From Macrostomum lignano (Eukaryota): DNA of 64,000 bases. The notes under the pieces are model-generated. The model ran no database searches. It was given only the letters and a program-made list of their open reading frames with translations, and had not been told where the DNA came from. Positions 35,469 to 58,548 of this stretch are shown here, in pieces (positions within the stretch are counted from its first letter, which is position 1; each line of letters starts with the position of its first letter). The stretch is from contig NIVC01001134.1 in assembly GCA_002269645.1 (NCBI GenBank), forward strand, positions 62,001 through 126,000, given 5' to 3'. Made by a program: the position numbers and the translations under genes.

Positions 35469-35554
<86 letters not shown>

Positions 35555-35593: not shown

Positions 35594-35633
35594 AGCCCGC
35601 AGGCATCACAAAGCTCCAACCGCACACCCACAG

Positions 35634-36631: not shown

Positions 36632-37063
<432 letters not shown>

Positions 37064-37509
37064 TCAAGTCATGGCGGACTGGGGGCTGAGCCCGATGGCC
37101 TGCAAGTCAGTCAAAAACGTGTCATTTAGCGTCACAGTTCCGCCTTGGCCACGGCGCAGGCGCTCAGTGGGCTGATGCAGGAGAGCCAGCGCCAGAGGAT
37201 TTTGCTCGCCGCGGCCGTGGCTTCTTAGGCAGTGGCCAAGTAACATCTGACGGCGTTTACGGATAGTGCAGCTGAGCGCGGGAACACCAGCGCGAGTCAT
37301 CAGGTCCCTGGTCGGCACAGTATCAGGGTAGTGCACGCCCAGGGCATAGTGGAGCAGCGACCTGTAGTGAACATATAGGGCTTGCTGTCGCGTCGCAGTC
37401 ATTGGCACAGCCTCCATGCCATATAGGAGAATCGGCTCAACGGCAGTGCGGAAAAGGCGCATCTTTAGGCCGTCGCGAGCGGTTGAATTGAAGACGCTCC
37501 TGAGCATGC
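37064..37509 (-). mobile_element. RTE-like LINE, post-RT C-terminal segment (non-inverted 3' part)
   Basis: RMLRSVF..KMRLFRTAVEPILLYGMEA..IRKRRQMLLGHCLR, typical of the RTE C-terminal region. Confidence 0.85.
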
Positions 37510-38154: not shown

Positions 38155-38379
38155 ACGCTAAATGGATCGGTTTATACGTCGTGCGCAACATGGCGCAACA
38201 GGACCAGTCGATAAACTGTTGCCTTGGAGTAGGGTTGGGCTCGGAGAAGCTGGAGAGAGCTGGGAGGAGAGAGGCCGACCGATGATTCTCAGTTGGGCTG
38301 TCAAAAACTATAAATACTGTCCAACTACCTGCACTGCAAGCAAATGCACCGCAGTCAATATATTTTTACCTTACTTAGC

Positions 38380-38520
38380 CCCCTTACTTACTTACTTATT
38401 TTAATTTTTATAGCCTTGAGCCCCATCAGAGCATAGCGCAGCGTACAGCTGAATAATTCATTAAAAAGACGTCACCTGTCTATCCCCCCCAGAGACAAAT
38501 CCCACAGCCAACTGTGCCCT
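38380..38520 (-). mobile_element. Short retroposon 3' end with (TAAG)n tail; related copy at ~41100-41290
   Basis: On the minus strand ...gctatgctc..ggggctcaaggc..taagtaagtaag; gccttgagcccc..ctgaataatt..tcacctgt..agacaaat is shared with the 41.1-kb copy. Confidence 0.5.
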
Positions 38521-39670
38521 TCTATTTCCCTAATCGCGGGAATCGCGGAGAATTGTCTGGCGGTCTCGAAACAATGAAGGTGATGCTGCGTTTCGAAGAA
38601 AAAAGCAACGATCAGAAGCAAGAGGAGCAAGAGAGCTTCGTAAAGTGTAGACTCTCCAAAAGAACGCAAGGACGAGTGGTTGAAGCATGTAATCGAGAGC
38701 ACACTACTGTAACAGATGAAAGAAGAAGGGCATTAATATGCAAGACATCAGGAACGAGTTAGGCCTAGCATCAGTGAGAGTGAAGATCGAACGAGCACAT
38801 TTCATTCGTATCGGTCACGTGTTACGCATGCCAGACGAGAGGCAGCCTAAGAAAGCAGTACTAGGCTGGTGCAAGAAACCGGAGGGAATCAGGAGCACCC
38901 GAAGAAGTGGAAATCCATTGTGGAAACGAGAACGAAAGAGATGCAAGAATGGGAGAGGAGTCGAGCTAAGGGGATCGAAGGCGAAAGGGACAGCAATCCG
39001 CTACAGAGTCCCATCCACCAGAAGAAACGGAGGAGAAGCCAGAAGCGAAACCTAGAGAGAGAAAGAAAGAGAAAGAAGAGAGAACGGACTTCAAATGCGA
39101 ATATGAAGGGTGTGAGAAAATCTGTAGGAGCAAAGCAGGACTCACAATACATGGCAAAAAGAATACACCGCGTCAAGGGCATGCAGGTACAATTCGAATG
39201 TAGCAAATGCAGCAAAACCTTTGCACAAGAAGCAACGATAAAAAATCATAGAAAGAGCTGTAGAGGAGAACCGGAAGACAGTGGGAAGACGGCGTGCGAG
39301 AAGTGCGGGAAGAGAGTAAGGACGTCCAACCTAAACAGGCACCGGAAGTAGCGCAGGAAACGCAGACCACTCCACCAAGGAAGTATCGAGCGAAAACAAA
39401 GAGCTGCGATTTATGAGTGCGGAAAGAACCTATCGGCAACCAACATGACGAGACACTAGAGGACATGCGGAGGGCCCTGAGGGAGCCAAGCCGAAAAGCG
39501 AGAACGGCAATCAGAGAAAGAAGAAAAAGAAGAAGAAGAAGAAAAAGAAGAAAAAAGAAGAAGAAGAAAAAGAAGAAAAAGAAAAAGAAGAAAAAGAAAA
39601 AGAAAAAGAAGAAGAAGAAAAAAAAGAAGAAGAAAAAGAAGAAGAAGAATATGATGATGATGATGATGAG
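38520..39670 (+). mobile_element. 5'-truncated RTE-like LINE 3' fragment with several C-terminal C2H2 fingers and an AAG-rich tail
   Basis: RIGHVLRMPDERQPKKAVLGW; CEYEGC..KAGL..H..RIH; CSKC..F..E...NH..SC; CEKCGK...NLNRH; followed by an (AAG/AAGAA)n(GAT)n run at 39515-39670. Confidence 0.8.
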
Positions 39671-39849
39671 GCCGCTGGCGAAGGCTGGTGAGTCATGATC
39701 CGCTTGCTCATGCTGCACCTACCTTCTAGCGGTAGCAAGCGTAGACCGCACGCCTCGGCTGTGCGGAAACAAAAAGGGAGCAGCAAATGCAAAGGAGGCC
39801 AAAACCGATGTAGAGATCTGCTGCGGCTGATTCACTCTAACATCAAAAT

Positions 39850-40590
39850 GACAAGATACATCGGCACATCTGGAGCAGTAAAACGCAACAGCCCCTACGC
39901 GAGATGGAAGAACGGGGAGTGAACATGTTCGAAGTACGTGGACAACTACAAGTAAGGAGCATCGAAAGTAAAATAGAAATCAGAACGCTGGAAAGGATCG
40001 GCCACCTGCTCCGCATGGAGAACTCCCGGATCACGAAGCAGGTGACTCTGGGCTGGCCAAAGAGAAGATTACCAAGGACGACAGCGAGAAAGCGCAAACA
40101 AACAACCATCGACTACTGGCGAAAAGTAATACGAAAAGCTGGATACGAACCGGACGACATCGAGCAGATCGCAAGGGACCGAGGATCTTGGAAAACGGCA
40201 GTCAAGGCAAGAGTGGAGCACATAACAAAATGGGAAGAGACGAAAGCAATGAACAAGAACACAGTTATGCCAAAGGACCAAACAGGACGTCAAACAGAGG
40301 ACAGATACTGCATCATCTGCAACAGAGAGTTCAAGACTCACACGGGACTGAAGATTCACAACACCAGGATGCATCGAGAACAGAGACAAGAGGAGAAGAA
40401 GTGCCCAAGATGCGGAGACATCCTAATTAACAAGGCCAGCGAAACGAACCACCTGAAGATCTGCAAAGGCGCCCCGAAAGGGACTTGCCCGTACTGTCTC
40501 CAGCCCAGGAGCACAGTACAATGGCCTACAAACAGGGTACCAACAAGAGGAAGAGAGCCAAGACGCCGACACGACGGACAGGCCTGAACC
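39850..40590 (+). mobile_element. Second, diverged RTE-like LINE 3' fragment with C-terminal zinc fingers
   Basis: RIGHLLRMENSRITKQVTLGW..ARDRGSWK..CIICNREFKTHTGLKIHNTRMH..CPRCG..NHLKIC. Confidence 0.8.
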
Positions 40591-43804: not shown

Positions 43805-43879
43805 CTGCTCTGATGGAAATCTTTTATTGCGCAAAGTATTTCTGTTTCTCATTCATTTATTTTCTCTTTCTCTCTCTCC

Positions 43880-44190
43880 CTCACTCTACTTCACTTCTCC
43901 CTCCCTCTACTCCCCTTCTCCCTCACTCTACTCCCCTTCTCCCTCACTCTACTCCCCTTCTCCCTCACTCTACTCCCCTTCTCCCTCACTCTACTCCCCT
44001 TTTCCCTCACTCTACTCCCCTTCTCCCTCACTCTACTCCCCTTCTCCCTCACTCTACTCCCCTTCTCCCTCACTCTACTCCCCTTCTCCCTCACTCTACT
44101 CCCCTTCTCCCTCACTCTACTCCCCTTCTCCCTCACTCTACTCCCCTTCTCCCTCACTCTACTCCCCTTCTCCCTTCCTCTACTCCCCTA
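43880..44190. repeat. 21-bp pyrimidine-rich minisatellite (intron)
   Basis: Unit ctctactccccttctccctca. Confidence 0.97.
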
Positions 44191-44624: not shown

Positions 44625-44820
44625 TACTGAGGGAATACCCCATGTCACTAAGGGAATACCCCATGTCACCAAGGGAATACCCCATGTCACTAAGGGAATA
44701 CCCCATGTCACTAAGGGAATACCCCATGTCACTAAGGGAATACCCCATGTCACTAAGGGAATACCCCATGTCACTAAGGGAATACCCAGGTCACTAAGGG
44801 AATACCCCATGTTACTGAGG
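44625..44820. repeat. 21-bp minisatellite
   Basis: Unit gggaataccccatgtcactaa. Confidence 0.97.
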
Positions 44821-45228
44821 GATCCGCACACTCCAAAATGTTCAGAATTCAGAACACGCAGTGTATAATCCAAGCAACTGCTTGTATAGGCTCTTATTAG
44901 AATGATGCCATACATTATCTTCGGTATTCACATTAGCTTCACAACATCGGAAATCCTATATTGACGAGAAACTATCCACAATATACCTAGTGATTTCCAT
45001 TTTTCCATCCATCCCATGTACTTTCAAATCTATAAAATACTTGTTTTTTAACCCTATTTTCATAAGTCAGTCAAAAATCAGCGACAAAAACCAAGCAAAT
45101 TGTTTTATCAACAAGTGGTATATTTTGAACAAAAACAACGAATCATTACTAATCAGAAATCAAACGAAAGAAACGACTTCAGTAACAGCATGAAGTTCGC
45201 ATTGACATCAAAAGCCAATTCAAAGCGC

Positions 45229-48200
45229 TCAGTAATCAGCGCGGAGTTCATTGTTGTCGCCGAAGTTCCAGTCGTAACTGTTGAGATTGGCGCTACCGAC
45301 TTCCTGCTGTTCTTGTTGCTCCTGCTTCTGGTCGCTGCTGTCGCTGAAGGCATTGTCGAAAGTGTTGTACTGCTTGCTGACTTCGGCACCGCTCGTGCCG
45401 TCCTTCTTGTTGGCATTGAAGGAACTCTCAGAGTCTGAGCCCTGCTGACTGTTTGTCTTGTACTCAATGTAGTTGCTGTCTTTGTTCTCGCTGCTGGCTG
45501 ACTGGAAGTCGGTGTTGGCTGCCTTCCAGTTGTCGTTGCTTTCAGTACCGGTGTTGGCTGCCTTCCAGTTGTCGTTGCTTTCAGTACCGGTGTTGGCTGC
45601 CTTCCAGTTGTCGTTGCTTTCAGTACCGGTGTTGGCTGCCTTCCAGTTGTCGTTGCTTTCAGTACCGGTGTTGGCTGCCTTCCAGTTGTCGTTGCTTTCA
45701 GTACCGGTGTTGGCTGCCTTCCAGTTGTCGTTGCTTTCAGTACCGGTGTTGGCTGCCTTCCAGTTGTCGTTGCTTTCAGTACCGGTGTTGGCTGCCTTCC
45801 AGTTGTCATTGCCTTCAGTACCGGTGTTGGCTGCCTTCCAGTTGTCGTTGCCTTCAGTACCGGTGTTGGCTGCCTTCCAGTTGTCGTTGCCTTCAGTACC
45901 GGTGTTGGCTGCCTTCCAGTTGTCGTTGCTTTCAGTACCGGTGTTGGCTGCCTTCCAGTTGTCGTTGCCTTCAGTACCGGTGTTGGCTGCCTTCCAGTTG
46001 TCGTTGCCTTCAGTACCGGTGTTGGCTGCCTTCCAGTTGTCATTGCCTTCAGTACCGGTGTTGGCTGCCTTCCAGTTGTCGTTGCCTTCAGTACCGGTGT
46101 TGGCTGCCTTCCAGTTGTCGTTGCCTTCAGTACCGGTGTTGGCTGCCTTCCAGTTGTCGTTGCTGCTTTCAGAACCGGTGTTGGCTGCCTTCGAGTTGTC
46201 GTTGCCTTCAGTACCGGTGTTGGCTGCCTTCCAGTTGTCGTTGCTTTCAGTACCGGTGTTGGCTGCCTTCCAGTTGTCGTTGCTTTCAGTACCGGTGTTG
46301 GCTGCCTTCCAGTTGTCGTTGCTTTCAGTACCGGTGTTGGCTGCCTTCCAGATGTCGTTGCTTTCAGTACCGGTGTTGGCTGCCTTCCAGTTGTCGTTGC
46401 CTTCAGTACCGGTGTTGGCTGCCTTCCAGTTGTCGTTGCCTTCAGTACCGGTGTTGGCTGCCTTCCAGTTGTCGTTGCTTTCAGTACCGGTGTTGGCTGC
46501 CTTCCAGTTGTCGTTGCCTTCAGAACCGGTGTTGGCTGCCTTCCAGTTGTCGCTGCCTTCAGTACCGGTGTTGGCTGCCTTCCAGTTGTCGTTGCTGCTT
46601 TCAGAACCGGTGTTGGCTGCCTTCCAGTTGTCGTTGCTTTCAGTACCGGTGTTGGCTGCCTTCGAGTTGTCGTTGCCTTCAGTACCGGTGTTGGCTGCCT
46701 TCCAGTTGTCGTTGCTGCTTTCAGTACCGGTGTTGGCTGCCTTCCAGTTGTCGTTGCTTTCAGTACCGGTGTTGGCTGCCTTCAAGTTGTCGTTGCCTTC
46801 AGTACCGGTGTTGGCTGCCTTCCAGTTGTCGTTGCCTTCAGTACCGGTGTTGGCTGCCTTCCAGTTGTCGTTGCCTTCAGTACCGGTGTTGGCTGCCTTC
46901 CAGTTGTCGTTGCTTTCAGTACCGGTGTTGGCTGCCTTCCAGTTGTCGCTGCCTTCAGAACCGGTGTTGGCTGCCTTCCAGTTGTCGCTGCCTTCAGTAC
47001 CGGTGTTGGCTGCCTTCCAGTTGTCGCTGCCTTCAGAACCGGTGTTGGCTGCCTTCCAGTTGTCGCTGCCTTCAGTACCGGTGTTGGCTGCCTTCCAGTT
47101 GTCGTTGCTACTTTCAGAACCGGTGTTGGCTGCCTTCCACATACTCTTTCCGTTGCTGTCAGCACCAGTTTTTGCCACTTTCCTGTCGTCGTCCTTGCTG
47201 CCAGCCCCGGTTTTGGGCACTTTCCAGTCGTCGTCCTTGCTGCCAGGATTGGTTTTGGGCACTTTCCAGTCGTCATCCTTGCTACCAGCATTGTTTTTGG
47301 GCACTTTCCAGTCGTCATCCTTGGTACCAGTGTTTTCCTTACTGCCAGCACCGGTTTTGGACACTTTCCAATCTTCTTCCTTGGTACCGGCGTTTTCCTT
47401 GTTGCCAGCAACGGTTTTGGGCACTTTCCAGTCGTCGTCCTTGTTACCAGCACCGCTTTTGGGCACTTTCCAGTCGTCGTCCTTTTTAGCAGCACCGGTT
47501 TCGGACACTTTCCAGTCGTCGTCCTTGCTACCAGCACCGCTTTTGGGCACTTTCCAGTCGTCGTCCTTGCTGCCAGGATTGGTTTTGGGCACTTTCCAGT
47601 CGTCATCCTTGCTACCAGCATTGTTTTTGGGCACTTTCCAGTCGTCATCCTTGGTACCAGTGTTTTCCTTACTGCCAGCACCGGTTTTGGACACTTTCCA
47701 ATCTTCTTCCTTGGTACCGGCGTTTTCCTTGTTGCCAGCAACGGTTTTGGACACTTTCCAGTCGTCGTCCTTGTTACCAGCACCGCTTTTGGGCACTTTC
47801 CAGTCGTCGTCCTTGCTGCCAGGATTGGTTTTGGGCACTTTCCAGTCGTCGTCCTTGCTACCAGCACCGCTTTTGGACACTTTCCAGTCGTCGTCCTTGA
47901 TGCCAGGATTGGTTTTGGGCACTTTCCAGTCGTCGTTCTTGCTGCCAGCATTGGTTTTGGACACTTTCCAGTCGTCGTCCTTGCTACCAGCACCGCTTTT
48001 GGACACTTTCCAGTCGTCGTCCTTGCTGCCAGAATTGGTTTTGGGCACTTTCCAGTCGTCGTTCTTGCTGCCAGCATTGGTTTTGGACACTTTCCAGTCG
48101 TCGTCCTTGCTACCAGCACCGCTTTTGGACACATTCCAGTCGTCGTCCTTGCTGCCAGAATTGGTTTTGGGCACTTTCCAGTCGTCGTTCTTGCTGCCAG

Positions 48201-49179
48201 CATTGGTTTTGGACACTTTCCAGTCGTCGTTCTTGCTGCCAGCATTGGTTTTGGACACTTTCCAGTCGTCGTCCTTGCTACCAGCACCGCTTTTGGGCAC
48301 TTTCCAGTCGTCGTCCTTTTTAGCAGCACCGGTTTTTGACACTTTCCAGTCGTCGTCCTTGCTACCAGCACCGCTTTTGGACACTTTCCAGTCGTCGTTC
48401 TTTTTAGCAGCACCGGTTTTTGACACTTTCCAGTCGTCGTCCTTGCTGCCAGGATTGGTATTGGGCACTTTATAGTCGTCGTCCTTGCTGCCAGCATTGG
48501 TTTTGGACACTTTCCAGTCGTCGTCCTTGCTACCAGGATTGGTTTTGGGCACTTTCCAGTCGTCGTCTTTGCTACCAGCATTGTTTTTGGACACTTTCCA
48601 GTCGCCTTCTTTGGTACCAGTGTTTTCCTTACTGCCAGCACCGGTTTCGGACACTTTCCAGTCGTTGTCCTTGCTACCAGGATTGGTTTTGGAAACTTTC
48701 CAGTCGTCGTCCTTTTTAGCAGCACTGGTTTTTGACACTTTCCAGTCTTCTCCCTTGCTACCCGTGTTTTCCTTGTTGCCAGCACCGCTTTTGGGCACTT
48801 TCCAATCGTCGTTCTTGCTTCCAGCATTGTTTTTGGGCACTTTCCAGTCGTCGTCTTTGGTACCAGTGTTTTCCTTACCGCCAGCACCGGTTTTGGACAC
48901 TTTCCAGTCTTCTTCCTTGGTACCAGTGTTTTCCTTGTTGCCAGCAACGGTTTTGGACACTTTCGAGTCTTCATCCTTGGTACCAGTGTTTTCGTTGTTG
49001 CCAGCAGCGGTTTTGGACACTTTCCAGTCGTCGTCCTTGCTGCCAGCACCAGTTTCGGACACTTTCCAGTCGTCGTCACTGCTGTTGTTACCGGTGTCAG
49101 TTCCGAAGGGAGGGGCTGCCAGCGTCAATGAGGCCCAAAGAGCCAACGCAATCAACAACGGATGCAGTCGAGCTGACAT
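45229..49179 (-). CDS. Intronless secreted tandem-repeat protein (1316 aa), function unknown
   Basis: Signal peptide MSARLHPLLIALALWASLTLA; 42 units of DDDWKV(S/P)KxxAGSK (14/20 aa); about 40 units of NWKAANTGTE(S/G)ND (13 aa); unique acidic C-terminus. All unit-length variants are multiples of 3 nt. The ORF-track start at 49188 is TTG; the real ATG is at 49179. Confidence 0.9.
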   Translation of the reverse strand: MSARLHPLLIALALWASLTLAAPPFGTDTGNNSSDDDWKVSETGAGSKDDDWKVSKTAAGNNENTGTKDEDSKVSKTVAGNKENTGTKEEDWKVSKTGAGGKENTGTKDDDWKVPKNNAGSKNDDWKVPKSGAGNKENTGSKGEDWKVSKTSAAKKDDDWKVSKTNPGSKDNDWKVSETGAGSKENTGTKEGDWKVSKNNAGSKDDDWKVPKTNPGSKDDDWKVSKTNAGSKDDDYKVPNTNPGSKDDDWKVSKTGAAKKNDDWKVSKSGAGSKDDDWKVSKTGAAKKDDDWKVPKSGAGSKDDDWKVSKTNAGSKNDDWKVSKTNAGSKNDDWKVPKTNSGSKDDDWNVSKSGAGSKDDDWKVSKTNAGSKNDDWKVPKTNSGSKDDDWKVSKSGAGSKDDDWKVSKTNAGSKNDDWKVPKTNPGIKDDDWKVSKSGAGSKDDDWKVPKTNPGSKDDDWKVPKSGAGNKDDDWKVSKTVAGNKENAGTKEEDWKVSKTGAGSKENTGTKDDDWKVPKNNAGSKDDDWKVPKTNPGSKDDDWKVPKSGAGSKDDDWKVSETGAAKKDDDWKVPKSGAGNKDDDWKVPKTVAGNKENAGTKEEDWKVSKTGAGSKENTGTKDDDWKVPKNNAGSKDDDWKVPKTNPGSKDDDWKVPKTGAGSKDDDRKVAKTGADSNGKSMWKAANTGSESSNDNWKAANTGTEGSDNWKAANTGSEGSDNWKAANTGTEGSDNWKAANTGSEGSDNWKAANTGTESNDNWKAANTGTEGNDNWKAANTGTEGNDNWKAANTGTEGNDNLKAANTGTESNDNWKAANTGTESSNDNWKAANTGTEGNDNSKAANTGTESNDNWKAANTGSESSNDNWKAANTGTEGSDNWKAANTGSEGNDNWKAANTGTESNDNWKAANTGTEGNDNWKAANTGTEGNDNWKAANTGTESNDIWKAANTGTESNDNWKAANTGTESNDNWKAANTGTESNDNWKAANTGTEGNDNSKAANTGSESSNDNWKAANTGTEGNDNWKAANTGTEGNDNWKAANTGTEGNDNWKAANTGTEGNDNWKAANTGTEGNDNWKAANTGTESNDNWKAANTGTEGNDNWKAANTGTEGNDNWKAANTGTEGNDNWKAANTGTESNDNWKAANTGTESNDNWKAANTGTESNDNWKAANTGTESNDNWKAANTGTESNDNWKAANTGTESNDNWKAANTGTESNDNWKAANTDFQSASSENKDSNYIEYKTNSQQGSDSESSFNANKKDGTSGAEVSKQYNTFDNAFSDSSDQKQEQQEQQEVGSANLNSYDWNFGDNNELRADY

Positions 49180-49252
49180 TTTTGACAATTCGATAAGTCA
49201 ATTAGATTGGCAATCGGTATTGAAATACACACGATGGTTGAAGACGCATGAG

Positions 49253-49258
49253 TTTATA
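49253..49258 (-). promoter_or_regulatory. TATA box of the repeat-protein gene
   Basis: TATAAA on the minus strand, about 75 bp upstream of the ATG. Confidence 0.45.
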
Positions 49259-49889
49259 TTGTGCAGTGTACCCACCCCTAATTATTTAGAATGATAATTT
49301 GAAAATTACCCTTGCAAACCCTTGTGCTAATGCAACAGTCTGGGTTGGGGGTGGGGGTTGGGGGTTGGGGTGGAGGTTCAATGGGAGAGGGTCTGAGAGA
49401 GGTCCGGCTGTCCGACCAATCAGACAGCTTCTCCATTTCCATTGTACACCGAGGCTAGCAGACCACCCCAAGCCCAATTATAAATAATCGATCGTTTCAT
49501 TGAAACGAAACTTTGTCAAGTCGGACTCTCACAGAACTATTCTGATTTACCGTTTGAAACCAGCATTGTACACTGTTAAAAATATGTACATAATTATTAT
49601 GATGCTACTTTCATTCAATTTGTTGTTAGATTTTACAAACTGAAGTACCTATAGAGAGAAAAACAATCCACTGTATAAAAATCCTTTGTCTCTAGGTATC
49701 TATCTATACTCAGAAACATTGAAAAGTCGCCACCCTTTGTCCCAGTGAGCATGAGTGCCTTTCGACCAGTGTCTATCACCTGGCCAGCCATTTTGATATT
49801 AAAAAAATGCTTGAAAAAAAACAATTAAAACCGGGTGGAAGCTTCAATTCACCCAATCTTTACCCTCCGCTCTTCCCAATTCTCTTTCT

Positions 49890-52800
49890 TCTTAATACTA
49901 AAAGTGGTGCGTTGTTTGTCTGTGTGATACATATCTCCTCCTAGACGACTTGCAAGTCAGCGTCGAAACTTATATGGGAAAACTGCAAATTTTCCGAGGA
50001 TGGCAGTGGGCTATTTCAATTTTTTATTTTTGCATTTTAAGATCCCGAAAAAAGCAAAAAACTGCAATATTGACCTTTGATAATCTTATTTGTCCCCTCT
50101 TTCTGCTTGGAGCTGAAAACTTGCATGAATTTTGAGCGATTGCGCCATAACTTTCTCCTATCTCTGCAGTGTATTTTCTCTCCAGTGGGGGTGCTTGCGT
50201 TCTCAGTGGCGGCGTGTGTACACTTGGACCTTGGCGCACGGGCTGACTGTATAGACAATTGCGCAACGATATGTGCTCTGATTTTCAATTAGGCAGCCCG
50301 GTGTATTTTTTGCACACTGAAATTCAATGCATCAACTTGCGAGCCTTTTTAGCAGGCAGGTGAACGTACACTCGATACTTCAATGCTTTAAATCGGGACA
50401 TTTCAAACGCAAACTGTTCCTCGAGTTCTAAACTTTAAAAGAATATACTTATATTGCTGGAAAGGTCTCGCAACACTGAGTTCGGGGATATAAGTTGTTT
50501 GTTTTAAATGTGAAAAGAAAAAACACAGCGATCGAAAACAATTTCCATACTTTTTACTTTCTGGAAATATTGTACTCATTTTGGGGTTCAATGGGGGTTC
50601 GACCAACCCCCCAACAGTTGGTGGGAGGGGGGGGGCGGTTCAACTTTTAATTGCCACTGCGGAAGGGGGTCAGTCGCTGTGTATTGGACGGTTGATTTAG
50701 ATTGCGCAATCATTTCGTTAACTTTACCTGAGCCTGATACTGACTGAATGAGAAAACGGTTGCGCAATAAATTGATTCAATTAATTCATATTTTTATCGG
50801 CGCCTTTCAACACGCAGCTCTGTGCAGCTCTAACCCTAACCCTAACTAATGAATCCTGAGAGTTGAGTTCTGTTTGACGGAGAAAATTTCGATTGGGTCC
50901 AGTTTCGCGGAGAGGATTTCTGTTTCGCGGAGAGGATTTCGATGGTGTTCAGTTTCACGGAGAGGATTTTAATGGATTTGGAGAACAGTTAGATGATGGG
51001 ATTCAGCTGATAGAGATCAGGGAATGGAATTCCGGTGATGGGAGTTCTTCCCCTTTCTCCTCCAGAGGAGGAGTTGGCCTCGTCCTAATACTAAAGTTGG
51101 TGCGATGATTGTTTGTTTGTTTGTCTGTTTGTTTGTGTGTTGCATAACTCCTCCTAGAATACTTGCAAGTCAGCGTTGAAACTTATATGGGGAAACTGCA
51201 AATTTTCCGGGGACTGCAGTGGGCTATTTCAATTTTTTATTTTCACATTTTAAGATCCCTAAAAAAGCAGAAAACTGATTTCCTAACCTTCTCTGGACAC
51301 TTTTTCTGCTCGGAGCCGAAAATTTGCATGATTTTGAGCGATTGCGCCACAACTTTCTCCTATCTCTGTAGTGTATTTTCTCGCCAGTGGGGTTGGTCGC
51401 GTTCTCAGTGGCAGCGTGTGTACAAGCGGACCCCGGCTGAAAAAATGAACTGTGTGTATTTCGTGGGGTGGTGGGTAAGTAAGCGCAATTATATGGCTAT
51501 TGTGCTGAGATTCAATTGGTTTTATTATCAGCACCTTTCAATTGACTGCCCTGTGCATTGGTTAGACAGTGAAATTCAATGAATAAACTTGCGGGCCTCT
51601 TTAGCAGGCAGTGAACGTATGAACGTACACTCAATATTGCAATGCTATAAATCGGCAAATTTCAAACTCAGACTGTTGCTGGAGTTTTTAACTTTGAGAG
51701 GAGAGACTTATATTGCTGGAAAGAACTTGCAACGCTGAGTTCGGGGATATAAATTGTTTGCTTTAAATATGAAAACTAAAAGCGCGGGATTCAAAAAACG
51801 ATTTCCATACTTTTAACTTCCTGCAAAGATTGTAGGAAGATTTTAGTTGAGGGGTTGAGTTAAATTTAATGATTCCCCGGAACGAGGGGGTTGGGCTTGG
51901 ACTGAGTGTACATAGCTGTTTTAAAAAGATAGAACTGTGCCGAGATTCAATTGGTTTTATTATCGGCCCTGTGTATTAGCTGGGCAGTGAAATTCAATGA
52001 ATTGCGAGCTTCTCTAGCAAGCAGTCGGGAAATCGGTAAATTTCAAACGCTAACTGTTCCTCGAGTTTTAAACTTTGAGAGGAGAAACTTATATTGCTGG
52101 AAAGATCTTGCAACGCTGAGTTCGGGAATATAAGTTGTTTGCTTTAAATATGAAAAGAAAATGCACAGCATTTGAAAAACTATGTCCATACTTTTAACTT
52201 TCTGCAAAAATTGTACTCAGTTTTGCGAGACGTAATAGATAAAGTTGGGGGAGGGTTCAACTTCTCACTGCTGCTGTGTATTGGAGGGTTGATTTAGATT
52301 GCGCAATGTTTTTGTTAACTTTAACTGAGACTGATACTGACTGACTGTGAAATCGGTTGCGCAATGAATTGATTCAATTAGTTCAATATTTTTATCAGTG
52401 CCTTTTAACACGAAGCTGTGCGTATAGTTCTAACCCTAACCCTAACCCTAACCCTAACCAATGAATCCGGAGAGTTGAGTTGTTTGACGGAAAAAATTCG
52501 ATTGAGTCCAGTTTAGCGGAGACGATTTCAATGTTTTAATTTTGACGGAGAGAATTTCTGTTTCGTGGAGAGGATTTCGATGGTGTTCAGTTTCACGGAG
52601 AGGATTTCGATCACGTTCATCTTCACAGTGAGGATTTCTGTTTCGCGGAGATAATTTATGATTGATTTCTGTTTTATCGAGACGATTTAGATGGATTTAA
52701 GTTTCAATGAGAGGATTTCGAAGGAGTCCAGTTTCATGGAGAGGATTTCGATAGTTTTCATTTGAACGGACAGGATTTCTGCTTTGCGGAGAGGATTTTG

Positions 52801-55800
52801 ATGGATTTGGCATCTTCAGTCAGTCAGAGAAGAGAGTAAAGAGAAGAATGAAAAAGAAGAGAGATGAGATGATAGAAAACAGAGTAGAAATGAGACGAGA
52901 GATTAGACATGACAGATGGGAGAAAAGAGGGGAGTAAGGCGGGAACGAAGGAGAGAGAAGAGAAGAGGAGAGAGGAGACGAGAGGGGAGATATGAGATAG
53001 CAGAGGGAGACAAGAGAGATGATAGGAGAGAGAATAGAGATGAGGGATAAGAGCGTACAGAGGTAATAGAAAAGAGGGGAGAGTAGAGGAGAAAGAAGGA
53101 GTGAGATGAGGGATGAGAGATGAGAGAGGAGGGGAGAGAGAAGAGAGGAGAAAAGAGGGAGAAATGAGAGATGCGATGAGAAAAGAGATGAGTGAGAACA
53201 TAAGAGAGAAGAGATTAGAGATTAGAGAAGAGAGGGGAGAAGATGAAATGAGAAAGGAGAGGAGAGAAGAGAGAATGGAGAGGATAGAAAAGAGAGAAGA
53301 GAAGAGATAGGGGATAGTGGTAAGGAGGAAAGAAAGATGGGAGACAAGAAAGTAGAGTGTGAGAGCGTATATGAGATATGAGAAATGAGAAGCAGATAGG
53401 AGAGAAAAGAGAAGAGAGAGAGGGTTAAGAGAGACGATAAATAAGTAAGAAGAGATGACATATGAGAGAGGAGAGAAGAGGGAGAGATAAAGAGAAGAGA
53501 GGAGACAGGAGACAGAAGTGAAGAGGAGAGATATGAGAGAAGAGAGGAGACAAGAGACAGGAGAGGGTACAAACGAAAGACGAGGGAGAAGAGATAAATA
53601 AGGGAGTAGGGGTAGAGATGAGATGAGAGAGAGGAGAGAGAAGAGAGTCACGATAATAGCGAATAGAAGAGAGAGGAGATATGAGAGACGTGAGAGTCTT
53701 TGAGCTATGGTCTTTCAAAGATTTTGTAAAGAATTTGGAGACGATTTGGAAGATAGGGTTCAAGACATGGAATTTCAGTTGATGGATATTTCAGGGAATG
53801 GAATTCCGGTGATGGGAGTTCTTCCCCTTTCTCCTCCGAAGGAGGAGTTGGCCTCGTCTTAATACTAAAACTGGTGCGTTGTTTGTCTGTGTGATACATA
53901 TCTCCTCCTAGACGACTTGCAAGTCAGCGTCGAAACTTATATGGGAAAACTGCAAATTTTCCGAGGATGGCAGTGGGCTATTTCAATTTTTTATTTTTAC
54001 ATTTTAAGATCCCGAAAAAAGCAAAAAACTGCAATCTTGACCTTTGATAATCTTATTTGTCCCCTCTTTCTGCTTGGAGCTAAAAATTTGCATGAATTTT
54101 GAGCGATTGCGCCATAACTTTCTCCTATCTCTGCAGTGTATTTTCTCTCCAGTGGGGGTGCTCGCGTTCTCAGTGGCGGCGTGTGTACACTTGGACCTTG
54201 GCGCACGGGCTGACTGTATAGACAATTGCGCAACGATACGTGCTCTGATTTTCAATTAGGCAGCCCGGTGTATTTTTTGCACACTGAAATTCAATGCATC
54301 AACATGCGAGCCTTTTTAGCAGGCAGGTGAACGTACACTCGATACTTCAATGCTTTAAATCGGGACATTTCAAACGCTAACTGTTGCTCGAGTTCTAAAC
54401 TTTAAAAGAATAGACTTATATTGCTGGAAAGATCTTGCAAAACTGAGTTCGGGGATATAAGTTGTTTGTTTTAAATGTGAAAAGAAAAAACACAGCGATC
54501 GAAAACAACTTCCATACTTTTTACTTTCTGGAAAGATTGTACTCATTTTGGGGTTCAATGGGGTTCGACCAACCCCCCAACAGTTGGTGGGAGGGGGGCG
54601 GTTCAACTTTTAATTGCCACTGCGGAAGGGGGTCAGTCGCTGTGTATTGGAGGGTTGATTTAGATTGCGCAATCATTTCGTGTGCACTTGGACCTTGGCG
54701 CACGGGCTGACTGTATAGACAATTGCAATTCACTGTTGCAGGCAGTGAACGTACACTCGATACTTCAATGCTTAAAATCAGAAAGTTTCAAACACTAACT
54801 GTTGCTCGAGTTTTGAACTTAGAGAGGAGAGACTTATATTGCTGGAAAGATCTTGCTGCGATGAGTTCGGAGATATAAGTTTTTTGCTTTAAATATGAAA
54901 ATTAAATTCACAGCATTCAAGAAAAGATTTTAATACTTTTAGCTTTCTGCAAAGATTGTTCTCATTTTGGAGTTCAATGGGGGTTCGACCGACCCCCAAT
55001 AGTTGGTGAGGGGGGGTTCAATTTCTAGCTGCACTGCGTATTGGAAGGGGGGTCGGTTGCTGTGTATTTGAGGGTTGATTTAGATTGCGCAATCTTTTTG
55101 TTAACTTTAACTTTTTGAGGCTGATACTGACTGCCTGAGAAATAAGTTGCGCAATTTAATTGGTTCAATGTTTTTACGGCGTCTTTCAACACGCAGCTGT
55201 GTGTAGCTCTAACCCTAACCCTAACCTTAACCAATGAATTCTGAGAGCTAGGCTGTTTGACGTAGAAATTTCGATTTAGTCCAGTTTCACGGAGAGGATT
55301 TCTATTTCGCGGAGAATATTTCGATGGTGTTCAGTTTCACGGAGAGGATTTCGATAGTGTTCAGTTTCACGGAGACGATTTCTGTTGCGCGGAGAGGTGT
55401 TGGAAAATGGGATTCCGCTGATGGAGTTCAGGGAATGGAATTCCGCTGATTGGAGTTCTTCCCCTTTCTTCTCCGAAGGAGGAGTTGGCCTCGTAAATAC
55501 TAAAGTTGGTGCGATGTTTGTCTGTCTGTATGTTGCAATTTTTCTCCTAGACTACTTGCAACTCAGCGTTGAAACTCACATGGGTAAACTGCAAATTTTC
55601 CGGGTTGGGTTTATAGCTATTTTAATCTTTCATTTTTATATTTTAAGATCCCTAAAAAAGCAGAAATAATAAAACAATAGGGAATATGATCCACCTTGCG
55701 CAACTCTTAGTGATTGCGCCACAACAGCTGGCCTATCTGTGTAGTGTATTCTTTTAGCTGAAGGGGTGTAACTGGGCCAGTTGGCATCAATTTTTAGTGA

Positions 55801-58548
55801 TTACGCCACAACTTTCTCCTATCTCGGCAGTGTATTTTCTCTCCAATGGGGAATGGGGCATTCTCAGTGGCTGCGTGTGTACAATCGGACCCTAGCTCAC
55901 TGGCTGATTGTATAGACAATTGCGCAACGATATGTTTTCTGATTTTCAATAGGCAGCCCTGTGTATTTGTTGGACAGTAAAATTCAATGAATAAACTTGC
56001 GAGCCTCCCACTGCTGCAGGCAGTGAACGTACACTCAATAGTTCAATTCCTTAAAACGGGAAATTTCAAAGCCAAACTGTTCCTTGAGTTTTAAACTTTA
56101 AGAGAAGAGACTTATATTGCTGGAAAGAGGTTGCAATGCTGAGTTAGGGGATATAAGTTTTTTGCTCTAAATGTGAAAATTAAAAGCACAGCATTCAAAA
56201 AGTGATTTCCATACTTTTAACTTTTTGCAAAGATTGTACTCCATTTCGGGGTTCAATGAGGGTTTGACAGACTCCCAACAGTGGGGGGGTTCAATTTCTA
56301 GCTGCACTGCGTATTCGAAGGGGTTCAGTCGCTGTGTATTGGAGGGTTGATTTAGATTGCGCAATTTTTTTGTTAACTTTAACCGAAGCTGATACTGACT
56401 GCCTGAGAAATAAGTTGCGCAATTTAATTGGTTCAATGTTTTAACGGCGCCTTTCAACATGCAGCTGTGTAGCTCTAACCCTAACCCTAACCATAACCAA
56501 TGAATTCTGAGAGCTGGGTTCTGTTTGACAGAGAAATTTCGATTGAGTCCAGTTACACGGAGAGGATTTTCGCGGAGAGGATTTTGATGGTGTTCAGTTT
56601 CACGGAGACAATTTCTGTTTCGCGGAGAGTTCAGGAAATGGGATTCCGGTGATGGGAGTTCTTCCCCTTTCTCCTCCAGCGGAGGAGTTGGCCTCGTCTC
56701 CTAATCCTAATACTAAAACCGACGCGATGTTTGTCTGTCTGTATGTCTGTCTGTCTGTATGTAGCAAGTGAACTCCTACAATTCTGCCAAGTCAACGTCG
56801 AAACTTATATGGGAAAACTGCAAATTTTCCGGAGCAGGCTTTAGGCTATTTTAATTTTTAATTTTCACATTTTAACATCCCTAAAAAAGCAGAAAACTGC
56901 TTTTTTAACCCCCAATAACCTTCTTTGGTCACTCTGCCTGGGGCATCAGCCAGTTTGTAAAAATAGCCACCCCAACCTCCGCCCGCGGGCCGCTGTGTAT
57001 TGAGGGGTGGTGGGTGCGCGTGTTCTGCGTTCAATGCAAATAAAACCCCCGCGTGTTGGGGGGTTAAGTTCAATTTAATGATTCCCCCAGACTGGGGGTT
57101 GGGCTTGGGCTGAGTGTACATAGCAGTTGTACAGTGTAAATAGATAGACTGTGTCGAGATTCATTTGGTTTTATTATTGGCAGCCATGTGTATTAGTTTG
57201 GCAGTGAAATTCAATGAATAAACTTGCGAGCTTCTCTAGCAAGCAGTCGGGAAATCGGTAAATTTCAAACGCTAACTGTTCCTCGAGTTTTAAACTTTGA
57301 GAGGAGAGACTTATATTGCTGGAAAGATCTTGCAACGCTGAGTTTGGGGATATAAGTTGTTTGCTTTATATATGAAAAGAAAAAGCACAGCATTTGAAAA
57401 ACTATTTTCATACTTTTAACTTTCTGCAAAGATTGTACTTAGTTTTGCGAGACGTAATAGATAAAGTTGGGGGAGGGTTCAACTTCTCACTGCTGCTGTG
57501 TATTGGAGGGTTGATTTAGATTGCGCAACTGTTTATTTAACTTTAAATAAGACTGATACTGTCTGACTGAGAAATGGTTTGCGCAATTAATTGATTCAAT
57601 TAATTCAACACGCAGCTCTGTGCAGCTCGAACCCTAACCCTAACCAATGAATTCTGAAAGTTAAGTTCTTTTTGACAGAGAAAATTTCGATTGAGTCCAG
57701 TTTCACGGAGTATTCTGATGGTTTTCGGTTTCACGGAGAGGATTTATTTTTCGTGGAGAGAATTTAGATGTATTTCTGTTTTACGGAGACGATTTTGATG
57801 GATGTCAGTTTCACTCAGAGGATTTCCATGGAGCCCAGTTTCACGGAGAGGATTTCTGTTTCGCTGAGAGGATTTCTGTTTCACGGAGGGATTTTGATGG
57901 ATTTGGTATCTTCAGTCAGTCAGTAAAGAGAGTAAAGAGAAGAGTGAAAAGAGAAGAGAGAAGAGATTATAGAAAAGAGAGTAGAGATGAGAGAGGACAG
58001 ATTAGACATGACAGATGGGAGAGAAGAGGGGAGTAAGGCGGGAACGAAGAGGGAGAGAGAAGAAAAGAGGAGAGAGGAGATGAGAGGGAATATATGAGAT
58101 AGCAGAGGGAGACAGGAGAGATGAGAGGAGAGAGAAGAGAGGAGCTGAGAGTAGAGGAGAAAGAAATAGTGAGATGAGGCATGAGGGATGAGAGATGAGA
58201 GAGGAGAGAAGAGAGGAGAGAGGAGAGAGGAGAAAACAGGGGATAAAGGAGACAGAAGAGAAAGACGAAAGACGAGGGAGAAGAGATAAATAAGGTGGTA
58301 GAGATGAGAGACGTGAGAGGAGAGAAAAGAGAAGAGAGGAGACAGAAGAATCTGAGTCTGGACAATGGCAGTCAGTTTTTGCGAACAGGGAAAACAAGAT
58401 ATGGTATTTGAAAGGCTTTACAGAGGATTTGGAGATGATTTGGAAGATGGGATTCAAGTCATGGAATTTCAGCTGATGGATTTCAGGGAATGGAATTCCG
58501 GTGATGGGAGTTCTTCCCCTTTCTCCTCCAGAGGAGGAGTTGGCCTCG
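49890..58548 (+). mobile_element. Head-to-tail array of five non-autonomous Helitron-like units
   Basis: Units 49890-51082, 51083-53856, 53857-55493, 55494-56696 and 56697-58548. Each begins T(C)..TAATACTAAA..TTTGTCTG and ends with the hairpin CTCCTCC-nnn-GGAGGAG followed by TTGGCCTCG. Internal modules are shared. Confidence 0.7.

What the first reader, a model, noticed from the sequence alone, without database searches (positions are those of the whole stretch)
45229..49260. Intronless gene for a 1316-aa secreted protein made of two different Trp-Lys repeat blocks
Seen: a signal peptide, then 42 zwitterionic units DDDWKV(S/P)KxxAGSK (some extended by ENTGTK), an abrupt switch to about 40 polar units NWKAANTGTE(S/G)ND, and a short acidic tail. 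There are no Cys in the mature repeats. Every length variant preserves the frame, unlike the neighbouring non-coding minisatellites, and there is a TATA box ~75 bp upstream. Higher-order duplications are visible (units 29-33 recur as 36-40). I recognise no family; it does not have the Gly/Arg/Lys-rich, lectin/EGF architecture I recall for flatworm adhesive proteins. Inference: a gland secretion (rhabdite, mucus, adhesive, eggshell or seminal-fluid protein) that self-assembles through Trp spaced every 13-14 residues (beta-solenoid, fibre or coacervate), or a precursor cut at K/KK into many short WK peptides.
Basis: partly seen in the sequence, partly recalled or inferred. Interest (0 to 1): 0.85.

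Follow-up and report, generated by a model that had tools for sequence, protein, structure and literature searches.

The report
Orphan secreted Trp-Lys repeat protein gene
An unannotated, single-exon gene in the flatworm Macrostomum lignano most likely encodes a 138-kDa secreted, cysteine-free, probably disordered protein made of two blocks of 13-14-residue tryptophan-lysine repeats; it has no relatives in any database searched, and nothing here shows that it is expressed or what it does.

Summary
On the minus strand, 49179-45229 is one 1316-codon ORF. It encodes a signal-peptide-like start, 42 zwitterionic DDDWKVxKxxxGxK units (nine of them extended by ENTGTK), 42 acidic-polar NWKAANTGTE(G/S)ND units, and a 93-aa unique acidic tail. 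There is no Cys.

The window is Macrostomum lignano contig NIVC01001134.1, which is crowded with minisatellites. This 3.6-kb compound array is the only array of 700 bp or more with a frame open right through it.

Further support for coding:
- The ORF runs into both unique flanks.
- An in-frame stop lies 21 nt before the ATG.
- The unique tail has coding-type GC periodicity (0.47/0.34/0.74 by codon position).

Against coding, differences between units show no synonymous excess, no GenBank or UniProt protein corresponds to it, and expression could not be tested.

It is an orphan: no Pfam, PDB or genuine sequence relatives, only unrelated repeats of the same period. AlphaFold calls it disordered, and a weak beta-solenoid signal for block B was not reproducible.

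Best reading: a lineage-specific secreted disordered diblock material protein that evolves as a coding minisatellite. The gland, the function and Trp-mediated assembly remain inference. The peptide-precursor idea is disfavoured.

The parts
49253..49258 (-). TATAAA box, 74-79 nt upstream of the ATG (candidate core promoter)
   Evidence: Read directly from the sequence. Function is inferred, not tested.
49198..49200 (-). In-frame TGA stop 21 nt upstream of the ATG. It closes the frame, so the ATG at 49179 is the first Met.
   Evidence: Sequence. The ORF listing starts this ORF at the TTG at 49188.
49117..49179 (-). Start codon and predicted signal peptide (aa 1-21, MSARLHPLLIALALWASLTLA; likely cleavage TLA|AP)
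   Evidence: Arg in the n-region. Hydrophobic core L8-L20 with an 11-residue Kyte-Doolittle mean up to 2.47. Thr at -3 and Ala at -1. No SignalP was available, so this rests on rules.
49078..49116 (-). Short unique N-terminal linker (aa 22-34, APPFGTDTGNNSS), which holds 2 of the 3 NxS/T sequons
47143..49077 (-). Block A: 42 zwitterionic units DDDWKV(S/P)Kxx(A/P)G(S/N)K of 14 aa. Nine are extended to 20 aa by ENTGTK and one is a 17-aa junction unit. There are 134 K+R against 130 D+E.
   Evidence: Segmentation. TRF periods 42 and 60, about 80% matches. Charge fraction 0.41, net charge per residue about 0, kappa 0.08.
47152..47811 (-). Higher-order 330-nt tandem duplication inside block A (units 29-35 at 47482-47811 and units 36-42 at 47152-47481)
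   Evidence: 14 differences in 330 nt, 3 synonymous and 11 non-synonymous
45511..47142 (-). Block B: 42 polar-acidic units NWKAANTG(T/S)E(G/S)(N/S)D of 13 aa (four of 14 aa). Net charge -40, pI about 4.0.
   Evidence: TRF period 39, 41.5 copies, 96% matches. Segmentation. Charge. At DNA level the B unit aligns with the 'ENTGTK + DDDWKV' part of the long A unit.
45232..45510 (-). Unique 93-aa acidic Ser/Asn/Gln-rich C-terminal tail, with no hydrophobic anchor
   Evidence: Chance of an open frame is 0.023. GC by codon position is 0.47/0.34/0.74. Only 0.7% of 1127 background windows reach that periodicity, which matches the transporter exon.
45229..45231 (-). TGA stop codon. GC falls from 0.52 in the tail to 0.33 in the 3' flank.
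45119..45124 (-). AATATA, candidate variant poly(A) signal 105 nt after the stop. No canonical AATAAA lies within 500 nt.
   Evidence: inferred only

Best explanation
This is a real but unannotated, single-exon, lineage-specific gene of Macrostomum lignano. It encodes a classically secreted protein of about 138 kDa (pI about 4.5) with no Cys, which is probably intrinsically disordered and built as a diblock.

**The two blocks.**
- The N-terminal half (block A) is a strong, well-mixed polyampholyte. Each unit has DDD followed by three spaced Lys.
- The C-terminal half (block B plus tail) is a polar polyanion.
- In both halves the only recurrent hydrophobic residue is one Trp next to a Lys every 13-14 residues.

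**Proposed mechanism (inferred).** The protein is a bulk secretory or extracellular material such as mucus, granule matrix, glue or coating. The highly hydrated charged spacers keep the chain expanded. The periodic Trp-Lys 'stickers' (pi-pi and cation-pi contacts), together with attraction between the basic Lys of block A and the acidic block B, give reversible multivalent cross-links. This is gel or coacervate behaviour, not a folded domain.

**Evolution.** The gene evolves as a compound coding minisatellite. Block B arose from the 'ENTGTK + DDDWKV' portion of the long A unit. Unequal crossing-over then made higher-order duplications, with selection on frame, composition and periodicity and not on the exact sequence.

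**Shown:** the ORF anatomy, the uniqueness of the open frame, the coding-type tail, the orphan status and the disorder prediction.

**Inferred:** secretion, expression, material function and Trp-mediated assembly.

**Confidence.** About 0.8 that it is a genuine coding gene for a secreted protein. About 0.45 for the material, sticker-and-spacer mechanism. The figure given is for the statement as a whole.
For: **Coding.**
- This is the only one of six frames open over all 3951 nt.
- Of 30 arrays in the window, none of the others of 700 bp or more has any open frame. This 3.6-kb array has exactly one, with an ATG 31 codons upstream and 92 open codons downstream.
- An in-frame stop lies 21 nt before the ATG, with an A at -3 and a TATAAA at -79.
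- The unique tail has GC3 of 0.74 against 0.47 and 0.34 at positions 1 and 2. That periodicity is reached by 0.7% of background windows and equals the bona fide transporter exon.
- GC drops to 0.33 right after the stop.
- All length variants (+18 nt nine times, +3 nt four times, and a 51-nt junction unit) keep the frame, although block A units are only about 80% alike.

**Secretion.** The N-terminus has n-, h- and c-regions and a TLA|A site. There is no other hydrophobic segment and no C-terminal anchor.

**Disorder and material character.**
- 87-92% of residues are disorder-promoting and mean hydropathy is about -1.6.
- Block A has a charge fraction of 0.41, net charge per residue near 0 and kappa 0.08. 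Block B has net charge -40.
- AF2 gives pLDDT 30-45 for block A, and pLDDT 30 with no secondary structure for all of block B plus the tail.

**Orphan status.** Nothing in Pfam or among PDB sequences. No real hit among 5.8 billion proteins with the full length or with a collapsed-repeat query. The exhaustive search returned only unrelated repeats of the same period.

**Origin of block B from block A.** DNA alignment.

**Why it could have been missed.** Repetitive flatworm secretory genes are known to assemble badly in transcriptomes (PMC9229212).
Against: - Differences between units show no excess of synonymous change: 15 synonymous and 46 non-synonymous events against 13.5 synonymous expected. 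The 330-nt duplication has 3 synonymous and 11 non-synonymous differences. Internal variation therefore gives no sign of purifying selection.
- The absence of stop-creating variants is only weakly improbable (P about 0.08).
- No protein from the GenBank annotation of this very contig, and none from UniProt, corresponds to it.
- No transcript or peptide evidence was found. Its tryptic peptides are absent from the footprint and tail mass-spectrometry tables of PMC6410801. Those searches used a transcriptome database that may lack this protein.
- No canonical AATAAA.
- The function and the sticker-spacer mechanism rest on composition alone.
Confidence: 0.5

Rival explanations
1. It is a non-coding compound minisatellite whose long ORF is a by-product of its repeat composition. 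It is either not transcribed or not translated.
For: - The window is crowded with minisatellites.
- Five of the six frames over the array carry only 3-9 stops, and ORFs of 678-1000 aa appear on the opposite strand.
- There is no synonymous excess among units.
- No annotated gene model, no homologue and no expression evidence.
Against: - Only one frame is fully open, and it continues 31 codons upstream to an ATG with a signal-peptide-like sequence and 92 codons downstream into unique sequence.
- The tail has coding-type GC3 periodicity at the 0.7% level.
- There is no frameshifting indel although block A has diverged by about 20%.
- No other long array in the window has an open frame.
Confidence: 0.15
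2. Block B, and perhaps block A, folds into a beta-solenoid or amyloid-like fibre with a Trp ladder, one strand per 13-residue unit. That would give a structural fibre or a carbohydrate- or ice-binding surface.
For: - AF2 on aa 567-810 placed a beta-strand in every B unit at pLDDT 60-65 and pTM 0.45.
- All Foldseek neighbours of that model are beta-solenoids: the SufB/SufD helix, FapC amyloid, hemolysin A and beta-helical antifreeze proteins.
- The period is strictly 13 residues with a conserved Trp.
Against: - Only 3 of the 5 models reached about 50 mean pLDDT.
- The same repeats modelled as a 637-aa segment gave pLDDT 30 and no strands.
- All Foldseek hits had E>0.4 and probability of 0.21 or less.
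- Each unit has only Trp plus Ala-Ala as non-polar residues and there are no Cys, which is too little for a solenoid core.
- Both predictions were made from a single sequence.
Confidence: 0.1
3. It is a polyprotein precursor that is processed at Lys or Lys-Lys into many short Trp-Lys peptides, either antimicrobial or signalling.
For: - A signal peptide followed by about 84 near-identical short units is the general layout of peptide polyproteins.
- Trp/Lys-rich peptides are a known antimicrobial class (general knowledge).
Against: - There are only 6 KK sites and no KR or RR sites for 84 units, and no Gly-Lys-Arg amidation signals.
- Cutting at single Lys would give DDDWK, VSK and TNAGSK fragments, which are too short and acidic to act on membranes.
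- B units carry net negative charge.
Confidence: 0.05
4. It is an anti-adhesive or release agent. A zwitterionic-anionic polymer secreted by the releasing glands, or as lubricating mucus, would mask the Lys/Arg-rich cohesive protein Mlig-ap1 or hydrate the surface.
For: - The mature protein has net charge about -49 at pH 8, with an acidic half of -51.
- PMC6410801 and PMC9229212 propose a still unidentified negatively charged releasing factor.
- PMC6410801 also shows that the worms cannot adhere to strongly hydrated surfaces.
- Well-mixed polyampholytes are strongly hydrated (general polymer knowledge).
Against: - PMC6410801 predicts a small molecule and reports low protein density in the releasing vesicles.
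- Nothing ties this gene to the tail plate.
- Its peptides are not in that paper's mass-spectrometry tables.
Confidence: 0.05

Closest known systems
Coding minisatellite (VNTR) genes for secreted low-complexity proteins, such as mucin VNTR domains and the yeast cell-wall adhesin mini- and megasatellites (PMC2566889)
   Same: - A signal peptide followed by long in-frame tandem arrays.
- Compound arrays made of two unit types.
- Higher-order duplications from unequal crossing-over.
- Conservation of frame and composition more than of exact sequence.
   Different: - It is not Pro/Thr/Ser-rich (P 2%, S+T 19%).
- It has no Cys-rich flanking domains and no anchor.
- The unit chemistry is unlike any of them: an Asp triplet, Trp-Lys and spaced Lys.
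- There is no sequence relationship.
[quoted passage not shown]
   Same: - Same organism.
- Large secreted proteins with extensive repeats that transcriptome assemblies handle badly.
- Lys-rich repeats whose function depends on charge.
   Different: - Mlig-ap1/ap2 are 5,407 and 14,794 aa and carry vWD, TIL, EGF, TSP1 and lectin domains with Gly/Arg/Lys repeats.
- This protein has no Pfam domain, 0.2% Arg and no Cys, and is net acidic.
- It is not found in the footprint mass-spectrometry tables.
Perna viridis foot protein 1 (Pvfp-1), a mussel adhesive with Trp- and Lys-containing decapeptide repeats whose Trp is C-mannosylated and 7-hydroxylated (PMC4275877)
   Same: A secreted marine-invertebrate protein in which short tandem repeats carry regularly spaced Trp and Lys, and Trp rather than DOPA is thought to provide cohesion and adsorption.
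   Different: - The C-mannosylated Trp of Pvfp-1 implies the WxxW/C sequon of C-mannosylation (PMC8433626).
- Here the smallest Trp-Trp spacing is 13 residues, so that sequon is absent.
- The repeats here are Asp/Asn-rich, not Pro-rich.
- There is no sequence similarity.
Bacterial or phage-like proteins with 14-residue 'G(S/T)xDLRWAV' repeats (P0002, P0117, P0123, P0133)
   Same: Same 14-residue period, sharing G-S-x-D-x-x-W-x-V in register with block A. Identity is 29% over 370 residues, and this was the best hit of the exhaustive search.
   Different: - Those units have the alternating hydrophobic pattern L-x-L-x-W-x-V typical of buried strands, and they sit behind a globular N-terminal domain of about 420 aa.
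- The flatworm units are D-D-D-W-K-V with charged neighbours.
- By my own estimate, sharing 4-5 of 14 positions in some rotation is expected by chance among the many 14-mer repeat families. I treat it as coincidence of period, not homology.
Polyampholyte or oppositely charged coacervating secretions, such as the sandcastle-worm cement proteins Pc1-Pc3 (listed in PMC4275877)
   Same: High charge density, low complexity, secretion from glands, and charge-driven condensation as the proposed way of working.
   Different: There, opposite charges sit on separate proteins and depend on phosphoserine and DOPA. Here both charge types are on one chain, Trp is the only aromatic residue, and no condensation has been shown.

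Membership tests
Classical secretory protein (cleavable N-terminal signal peptide) | N-terminal basic n-region, hydrophobic h-region of 7-15 residues, small residues at -3 and -1, and no further membrane segment | tested here: met
   The N-terminus is MSAR-LHPLLIALALWASLTL-A|AP. The 11-residue Kyte-Doolittle mean peaks at 2.47, with Thr at -3 and Ala at -1. The rest of the protein has a mean hydropathy of about -1.6. This was judged by rule, because no SignalP was available.
Coding minisatellite (in-frame tandem-repeat gene) | Unit lengths are multiples of 3, one frame stays open through the array and into unique coding flanks, and indels preserve the frame | tested here: met
   Units are 39, 42, 51 and 60 nt. 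Exactly one frame is open, whereas no other array of 700 bp or more in the window has any.
Coding sequence under purifying selection | Excess of synonymous over non-synonymous differences between copies | tested here: not met
   There are 15 synonymous and 46 non-synonymous events against 13.5 synonymous expected under random mutation. The 330-nt duplicate has 3 synonymous and 11 non-synonymous differences. Concerted evolution blurs this test.
Flatworm duo-gland adhesive proteins (Mlig-ap1/ap2 type) | vWD, TIL, EGF, TSP1 or lectin domains, Gly/Arg/Lys-rich repeats, and presence in adhesive footprints | tested here: not met
   No Pfam domain. Arg is 0.2% and Cys 0%. No tryptic peptides of this protein appear in the supplementary mass-spectrometry tables of PMC6410801.
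Mucins and mucin-like PTS-repeat proteins | Pro/Thr/Ser-dominated repeats, usually with Cys-rich vWD or CK domains | tested here: not met
   P is 2.1%, S+T 19% and Cys 0. O-glycosylation itself cannot be tested here.
Neuropeptide or antimicrobial-peptide polyprotein precursors | Each peptide unit is flanked by dibasic (KR/RR/KK) cleavage sites, often with Gly for amidation | tested here: not met
   There are 6 KK sites in 1316 aa against 84 units, and no KR or RR.
C-mannosylated Trp-repeat proteins (TSR superfamily, Pvfp-1) | W-x-x-W/C sequon | tested here: not met
   The minimum Trp-Trp spacing is 13 residues and there is no Cys. The sequon definition is taken from PMC8433626.
Beta-solenoid repeat proteins (beta-helical antifreeze proteins, functional amyloids) | Confidently predicted or solved stack of one strand-turn per repeat with an ordered core | tested here: inconclusive
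   AF2 gave periodic strands at pLDDT 60-65 for 244 aa but pLDDT 30 and no strands for 637 aa. Foldseek hits to beta-solenoids all had E>0.4.
Expressed gene | Transcript and/or peptide evidence | not testable with these tools
   No M. lignano RNA-seq or transcriptome could be queried. Exact-product look-up and protein searches found no record.

The most novel reading that the evidence does not exclude
The protein could be a natural 'zwitterionic-block plus anionic-block' polymer with periodic Trp-Lys stickers, which would be a class of secreted biomaterial protein not described before. It would act as a hydration, anti-adhesion or release agent. One candidate role is the unidentified negatively charged releasing factor of the flatworm duo-gland system. 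It may also have been born and expanded from minisatellite DNA in a genome crowded with minisatellites.
Probability: 0.07. Interest if true: 0.8.

Novelty: new variant of a known kind. Interest (0 to 1): 0.45.

Why it matters
If the gene is expressed, it adds a large secreted protein to the gene set of a model flatworm used for work on bioadhesion, regeneration and sexual selection. It is missing from the GenBank annotation of its own contig.

Its chemistry is unusual for a secretion. It has no Cys, Tyr/DOPA or Pro/Thr/Ser bias. It has one Trp-Lys pair every 13-14 residues in a perfectly mixed polyampholyte, joined to a polyanion. That makes it a compact natural test case for sticker-and-spacer and charge-patterning ideas. 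It is also a possible template for reversible wet adhesives or non-fouling coatings.

It also shows how coding minisatellites can be told apart from the many non-coding ones in the same genome: an open frame that runs through into unique flanks, and GC3 periodicity in the unique tail.

If it is not expressed, it is a caution about ORFs in repeat arrays.

Tried and rejected
- **Full-length protein search**. It returned two compositional hits only, a Spodoptera Asn/Ser-repeat membrane protein and a jgi hypothetical. I rejected both as homologues after reading the sequences.
- **Collapsed-repeat query** with both unique termini, one to three units of each type and the junction. No hits.
- **Exhaustive phmmer** of the last 1200 aa. 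There were 234 hits at E of 0.001 or less. Every one I inspected is an unrelated 13- or 14-residue repeat (STVTKADDVAKDI, PSGRPSNDPTSSQ, PEDRLPVPGTGTV, GSxDLRWAV). Repetition inflates the E-values.
- **Pfam** gave only a sub-threshold Tsi3 match. **PDB sequences** gave nothing. **Rfam** found nothing in the window.
- **Exact-product look-up** found no record.
- **Degenerate DNA patterns** for WKAANTGTE in metagenomes and for DDDWKVxK in prokaryote genomes gave only single chance matches and no arrays.
- **Literature.** Peptide strings were not found in full text, nor in the supplements of PMC6410801, PMC5977470 and PMC8621496. Keyword searches did not turn up this protein.
- **Ka/Ks-type tests** among units and between the 330-nt duplicates were uninformative, because the pattern looks neutral.
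- **Structure.** Two single-sequence AF2 runs disagreed with each other. Foldseek was not significant.
- **Considered and rejected on sequence.** A GPI or membrane anchor (no hydrophobic C-terminus), N-glycoprotein (3 sequons), tyrosine-tanned eggshell protein (6 Tyr) and C-mannosylation (no WxxW).
- **Not possible.** I could not reach a second, allelic or homeologous, copy of the locus. The contig look-up gives only 10-kb flanks around the transporter gene, which lies 31 kb away.

Full report
**1. What is there**

The finding's coordinates hold one ORF on the minus strand. The ATG is at 49179 and the TGA at 45231-45229, giving 1316 codons. The ORF listing extends it by three codons to a TTG at 49188.

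Segmenting the translation gives:
- aa 1-34: MSARLHPLLIALALWASLTLAAPPFGTDTGNNSS.
- 42 'A' units with consensus DDDWKV(S/P)K(T/S)(N/G)(A/P)G(S/N)K. Of these, 32 are 14 aa, 9 are 20 aa because of an ENTGTK-type extension, and one is a 17-aa junction unit.
- 42 'B' units with consensus NWKAANTG(T/S)E(G/S)(N/S)D. Of these, 37 are 13 aa, 4 are 14 aa, and the last is partial.
- A unique 93-aa tail rich in Ser, Asn, Gln, Asp and Glu.

The protein has no Cys at all. It has 80 Trp, almost all 13 or 14 residues apart. Units 29-35 are duplicated as units 36-42, a 330-nt duplication with 14 differences. TRF sees the same structure at DNA level: period 39 with 96% matches for block B, and periods 42 and 60 with about 80% matches for block A.

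A TATAAA lies at 49258-49253. There is an A at -3 of the ATG, and an in-frame TGA 21 nt upstream. The only things it did not state are the strand and the organism.

**2. Where it comes from**

A 498-codon exon at 13195-14691 (minus strand) is 100% identical to the Macrostomum lignano cationic amino-acid transporter BOX15_Mlig012557g1. The 24,506 nt around that gene in GenBank contig NIVC01001134.1 (assembly GCA_002269645.1) match the window base for base. The window is therefore M. lignano, at about contig positions 62001-126000.

**3. Is it a gene or just another minisatellite?**

This had to be asked for two reasons. The window holds some 30 mini- and microsatellite arrays. The repeat composition also leaves all six frames largely open across the array, and ORFs of 678 and 1000 aa appear on the opposite strand.

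Evidence for coding:
- (a) Only the claimed frame has no stop over the full 3951 nt. The other five have 3-81 stops.
- (b) As an internal control I checked every array in the window. None of the other arrays of 700 bp or more has any frame open across it. This compound array is the longest at 3.6 kb and has exactly one. That frame reaches an ATG 31 codons upstream and runs 92 codons into unique downstream sequence.
- (c) The unique tail has GC of 0.47, 0.34 and 0.74 at codon positions 1, 2 and 3. Only 0.7% of 1127 background windows of the same length reach that periodicity, and it equals the mean of the transporter exon. GC then drops from 0.52 to 0.33 right after the stop.
- (d) All length variants keep the frame, although block A units have diverged to about 80% identity. 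Diverged neighbouring arrays carry 2-14% indels.
- (e) The N-terminus has the anatomy of a cleavable signal peptide.

Evidence against coding, or neutral:
- Variation among units shows no excess of synonymous change: 15 synonymous and 46 non-synonymous events against 13.5 synonymous expected. The 330-nt duplicate has 3 synonymous and 11 non-synonymous differences.
- The absence of stop-creating variants is only mildly unlikely (P about 0.08).
- There is no canonical AATAAA, only an AATATA 105 nt after the stop.
- No GenBank or UniProt protein corresponds to this ORF, even though the contig is annotated.

Repetitive flatworm secretory genes are known to be split or lost in short-read transcriptomes (PMC9229212). 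That makes the missing annotation weak evidence. I put the probability that this is a genuine protein-coding gene at about 0.8. Expression could not be tested with the tools at hand.

**4. Relatives**

- Pfam gives only a sub-threshold Tsi3 match, and PDB sequences give nothing.
- The full-length search of 5.8 billion proteins gave two compositional hits.
- A 253-aa 'collapsed' query, which held both unique termini, the junction unit and one to three units of each type, gave nothing.
- An exhaustive phmmer search of 1.84 billion representatives with the last 1200 residues gave 234 hits at E of 0.001 or less. Every sequence I inspected is an unrelated protein that happens to have 13- or 14-residue repeats.
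- The best hit is a bacterial or phage-like family with 'G(S/T)xDLRWAV' repeats. It shares G-S-x-D-x-x-W-x-V with block A in register, at 29% identity. By my own estimate, sharing four or five of 14 positions in some rotation is expected by chance among many repeat families. Those units also have a buried-strand hydrophobic pattern that the flatworm units lack.
- Degenerate DNA patterns found only isolated chance matches in metagenomes and prokaryote genomes.

The protein is an orphan in all the collections available here. Those collections seem to lack other Macrostomum species: no transporter hit lies between the M. lignano copies and paralogues (97-100% and 51-56% identity) and the 40-52% identical hits. 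Conservation within the genus therefore remains open.

**5. Physical character**

- The mature protein is about 138 kDa with pI about 4.5.
- Block A has 134 Lys+Arg against 130 Asp+Glu. Its charge fraction is 0.41, its net charge per residue is near 0, and kappa is 0.08 against 0.155 for shuffles. It is a strong polyampholyte whose charges are mixed more evenly than random.
- Block B has net charge -40 (pI 4.0), and the tail has net charge -11.
- Between 87% and 92% of residues are disorder-promoting.
- Trp is the only regular hydrophobic residue. It is always followed by Lys and is joined by Val in block A and Ala-Ala in block B.
- There are 3 N-glycosylation sequons, 6 Lys-Lys pairs and no WxxW.
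- At DNA level the B unit aligns with the 'ENTGTK + DDDWKV' portion of the long A unit. Block B is therefore a derived, charge-neutralised offshoot of block A (Lys to Glu, DDD to NDN).

**6. Structure prediction**

AF2 was run from single sequences. On aa 567-810 it predicted block A as disordered (pLDDT 30-45). It placed one beta-strand in each B unit at pLDDT 60-65 and pTM 0.45, with three of the five models near a mean of 50.

Foldseek neighbours of that model are all beta-solenoids: SufB/SufD, FapC amyloid, hemolysin A and beta-helical antifreeze proteins. All have E>0.4.

The complete block B plus tail (637 aa) came out at pLDDT 30 with no secondary structure. The solenoid idea is therefore unconfirmed, and disorder is the default reading.

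**7. Most likely mechanism**

I commit to a secreted, disordered diblock material protein. The hydrated charged spacers keep the chain expanded. The periodic Trp-Lys stickers, and attraction between the Lys of block A and the acidic block B, give reversible multivalent cross-links, so it would behave as a gel or coacervate. The gene evolves as a compound coding minisatellite under selection for frame, composition and period.

The gene anatomy and composition are shown. Secretion is inferred from the signal peptide. The material function and Trp-mediated assembly are inferred from composition alone.

Rivals, with my estimates:
- Non-coding minisatellite: 0.15.
- Beta-solenoid fibre: 0.10.
- Peptide precursor: 0.05. 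It is disfavoured by the lack of dibasic sites.
- Anti-adhesive or releasing agent of the duo-gland system: 0.05. PMC6410801 and PMC9229212 still list the negatively charged releasing factor as unknown, but they predict a small molecule and protein-poor vesicles.

**8. Comparison with known things**

It works most like the secreted low-complexity proteins encoded by coding minisatellites. Examples are mucin VNTR domains and yeast adhesin minisatellites (PMC2566889). It also resembles charge- and aromatic-driven marine secretions, such as Pvfp-1 with its Trp/Lys decapeptides (PMC4275877) and the sandcastle-worm coacervates.

It is not a member of any of these. The defining features of Mlig-ap1/ap2, mucins, peptide precursors and C-mannosylated Trp repeats were each tested and not met (see the membership table).

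**9. Verdict**

The feature is real and the description accurate. It is most probably a genuine, unannotated orphan gene for a secreted repeat protein of unusual chemistry. I rate it of moderate interest (0.45) and as a new variant of a known kind. Interest would rise sharply if in situ hybridisation or proteomics placed it in a specific gland.

Noticed in passing
window 1-64000: The window is Macrostomum lignano contig NIVC01001134.1 (GCA_002269645.1), about positions 62001-126000. A 24,506-nt stretch (window 1499-26004) is identical to the GenBank record.
   Followed up: yes
window 11499-16004 (minus strand): A cationic amino-acid transporter gene (SLC7/CAT family, BOX15_Mlig012557g1, 674 aa) with one 498-codon exon at 13195-14691. 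A (GACA)n microsatellite at 15383-15657 lies inside the gene span, apparently in an intron. M. lignano also has a 97% identical copy (P0004) and paralogues at 56% and 51% identity.
   Followed up: partly
window about 1499-8977 (minus strand; L001 17028-24506): An annotated gene for a TPR-rich protein (1072-aa product with many TPR_1/TPR_11/TPR_12 hits) lies next to the transporter gene and runs off the end of the fetched locus.
   Followed up: no
window 31029-31835 (+): An ORF with a C1 (phorbol-ester/DAG-type) zinc finger and the start of a Rubicon-homology domain. It is probably one exon of a Rubicon/PLEKHM-like gene. The region is GC-rich (0.56).
   Followed up: partly
window 37064-40587: Retroelement remains. 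There is a reverse-transcriptase (RVT_1) fragment at 37510-38214 (+), an overlapping ORF on the minus strand, two ORFs with C2H2-type zinc fingers (38869-39351 and 39904-40587) and a long A/T-rich tract at 39513-39649.
   Followed up: partly
window 10802-29094 and 32729-37058: Minisatellite density is very high. Arrays of 1-2.2 kb have 20-33-bp units: 11904-13136 (31 bp), 19135-20207 (33 bp), 21273-23259 (20 bp), 25327-27556 (20 bp, G-rich) and 28015-29094 (20 bp). There are also long (AGTT)n and (TGTC)n tracts. None of these long arrays has an open frame across it. Several show strong strand asymmetry, with GC skew up to 0.57.
   Followed up: partly
window 43875-44189 and 44626-44822: Two 21-bp minisatellites lie just 3' of the gene. 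Their period is divisible by 3 and they give short spurious ORFs in several frames. This shows that period alone does not indicate coding here.
   Followed up: yes
proteins P0002, P0117, P0123, P0133 (not in the window): An uncharacterised bacterial or phage-like family has 20-28 tandem 14-residue 'G(S/T)xDLRWAV' repeats behind a globular N-terminal domain of about 420 aa. Its pattern of period, Trp and Val coincides in register with block A. I could not run Pfam on it because the call exceeded the size limit.
   Followed up: partly
window 49300-64000: No convincing protein-coding ORF lies in the 15 kb upstream of the gene, only repeat-derived ORFs and diverged 26-33-bp arrays (59996-62655). 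The gene sits in a gene-poor, repeat-rich stretch.
   Followed up: partly
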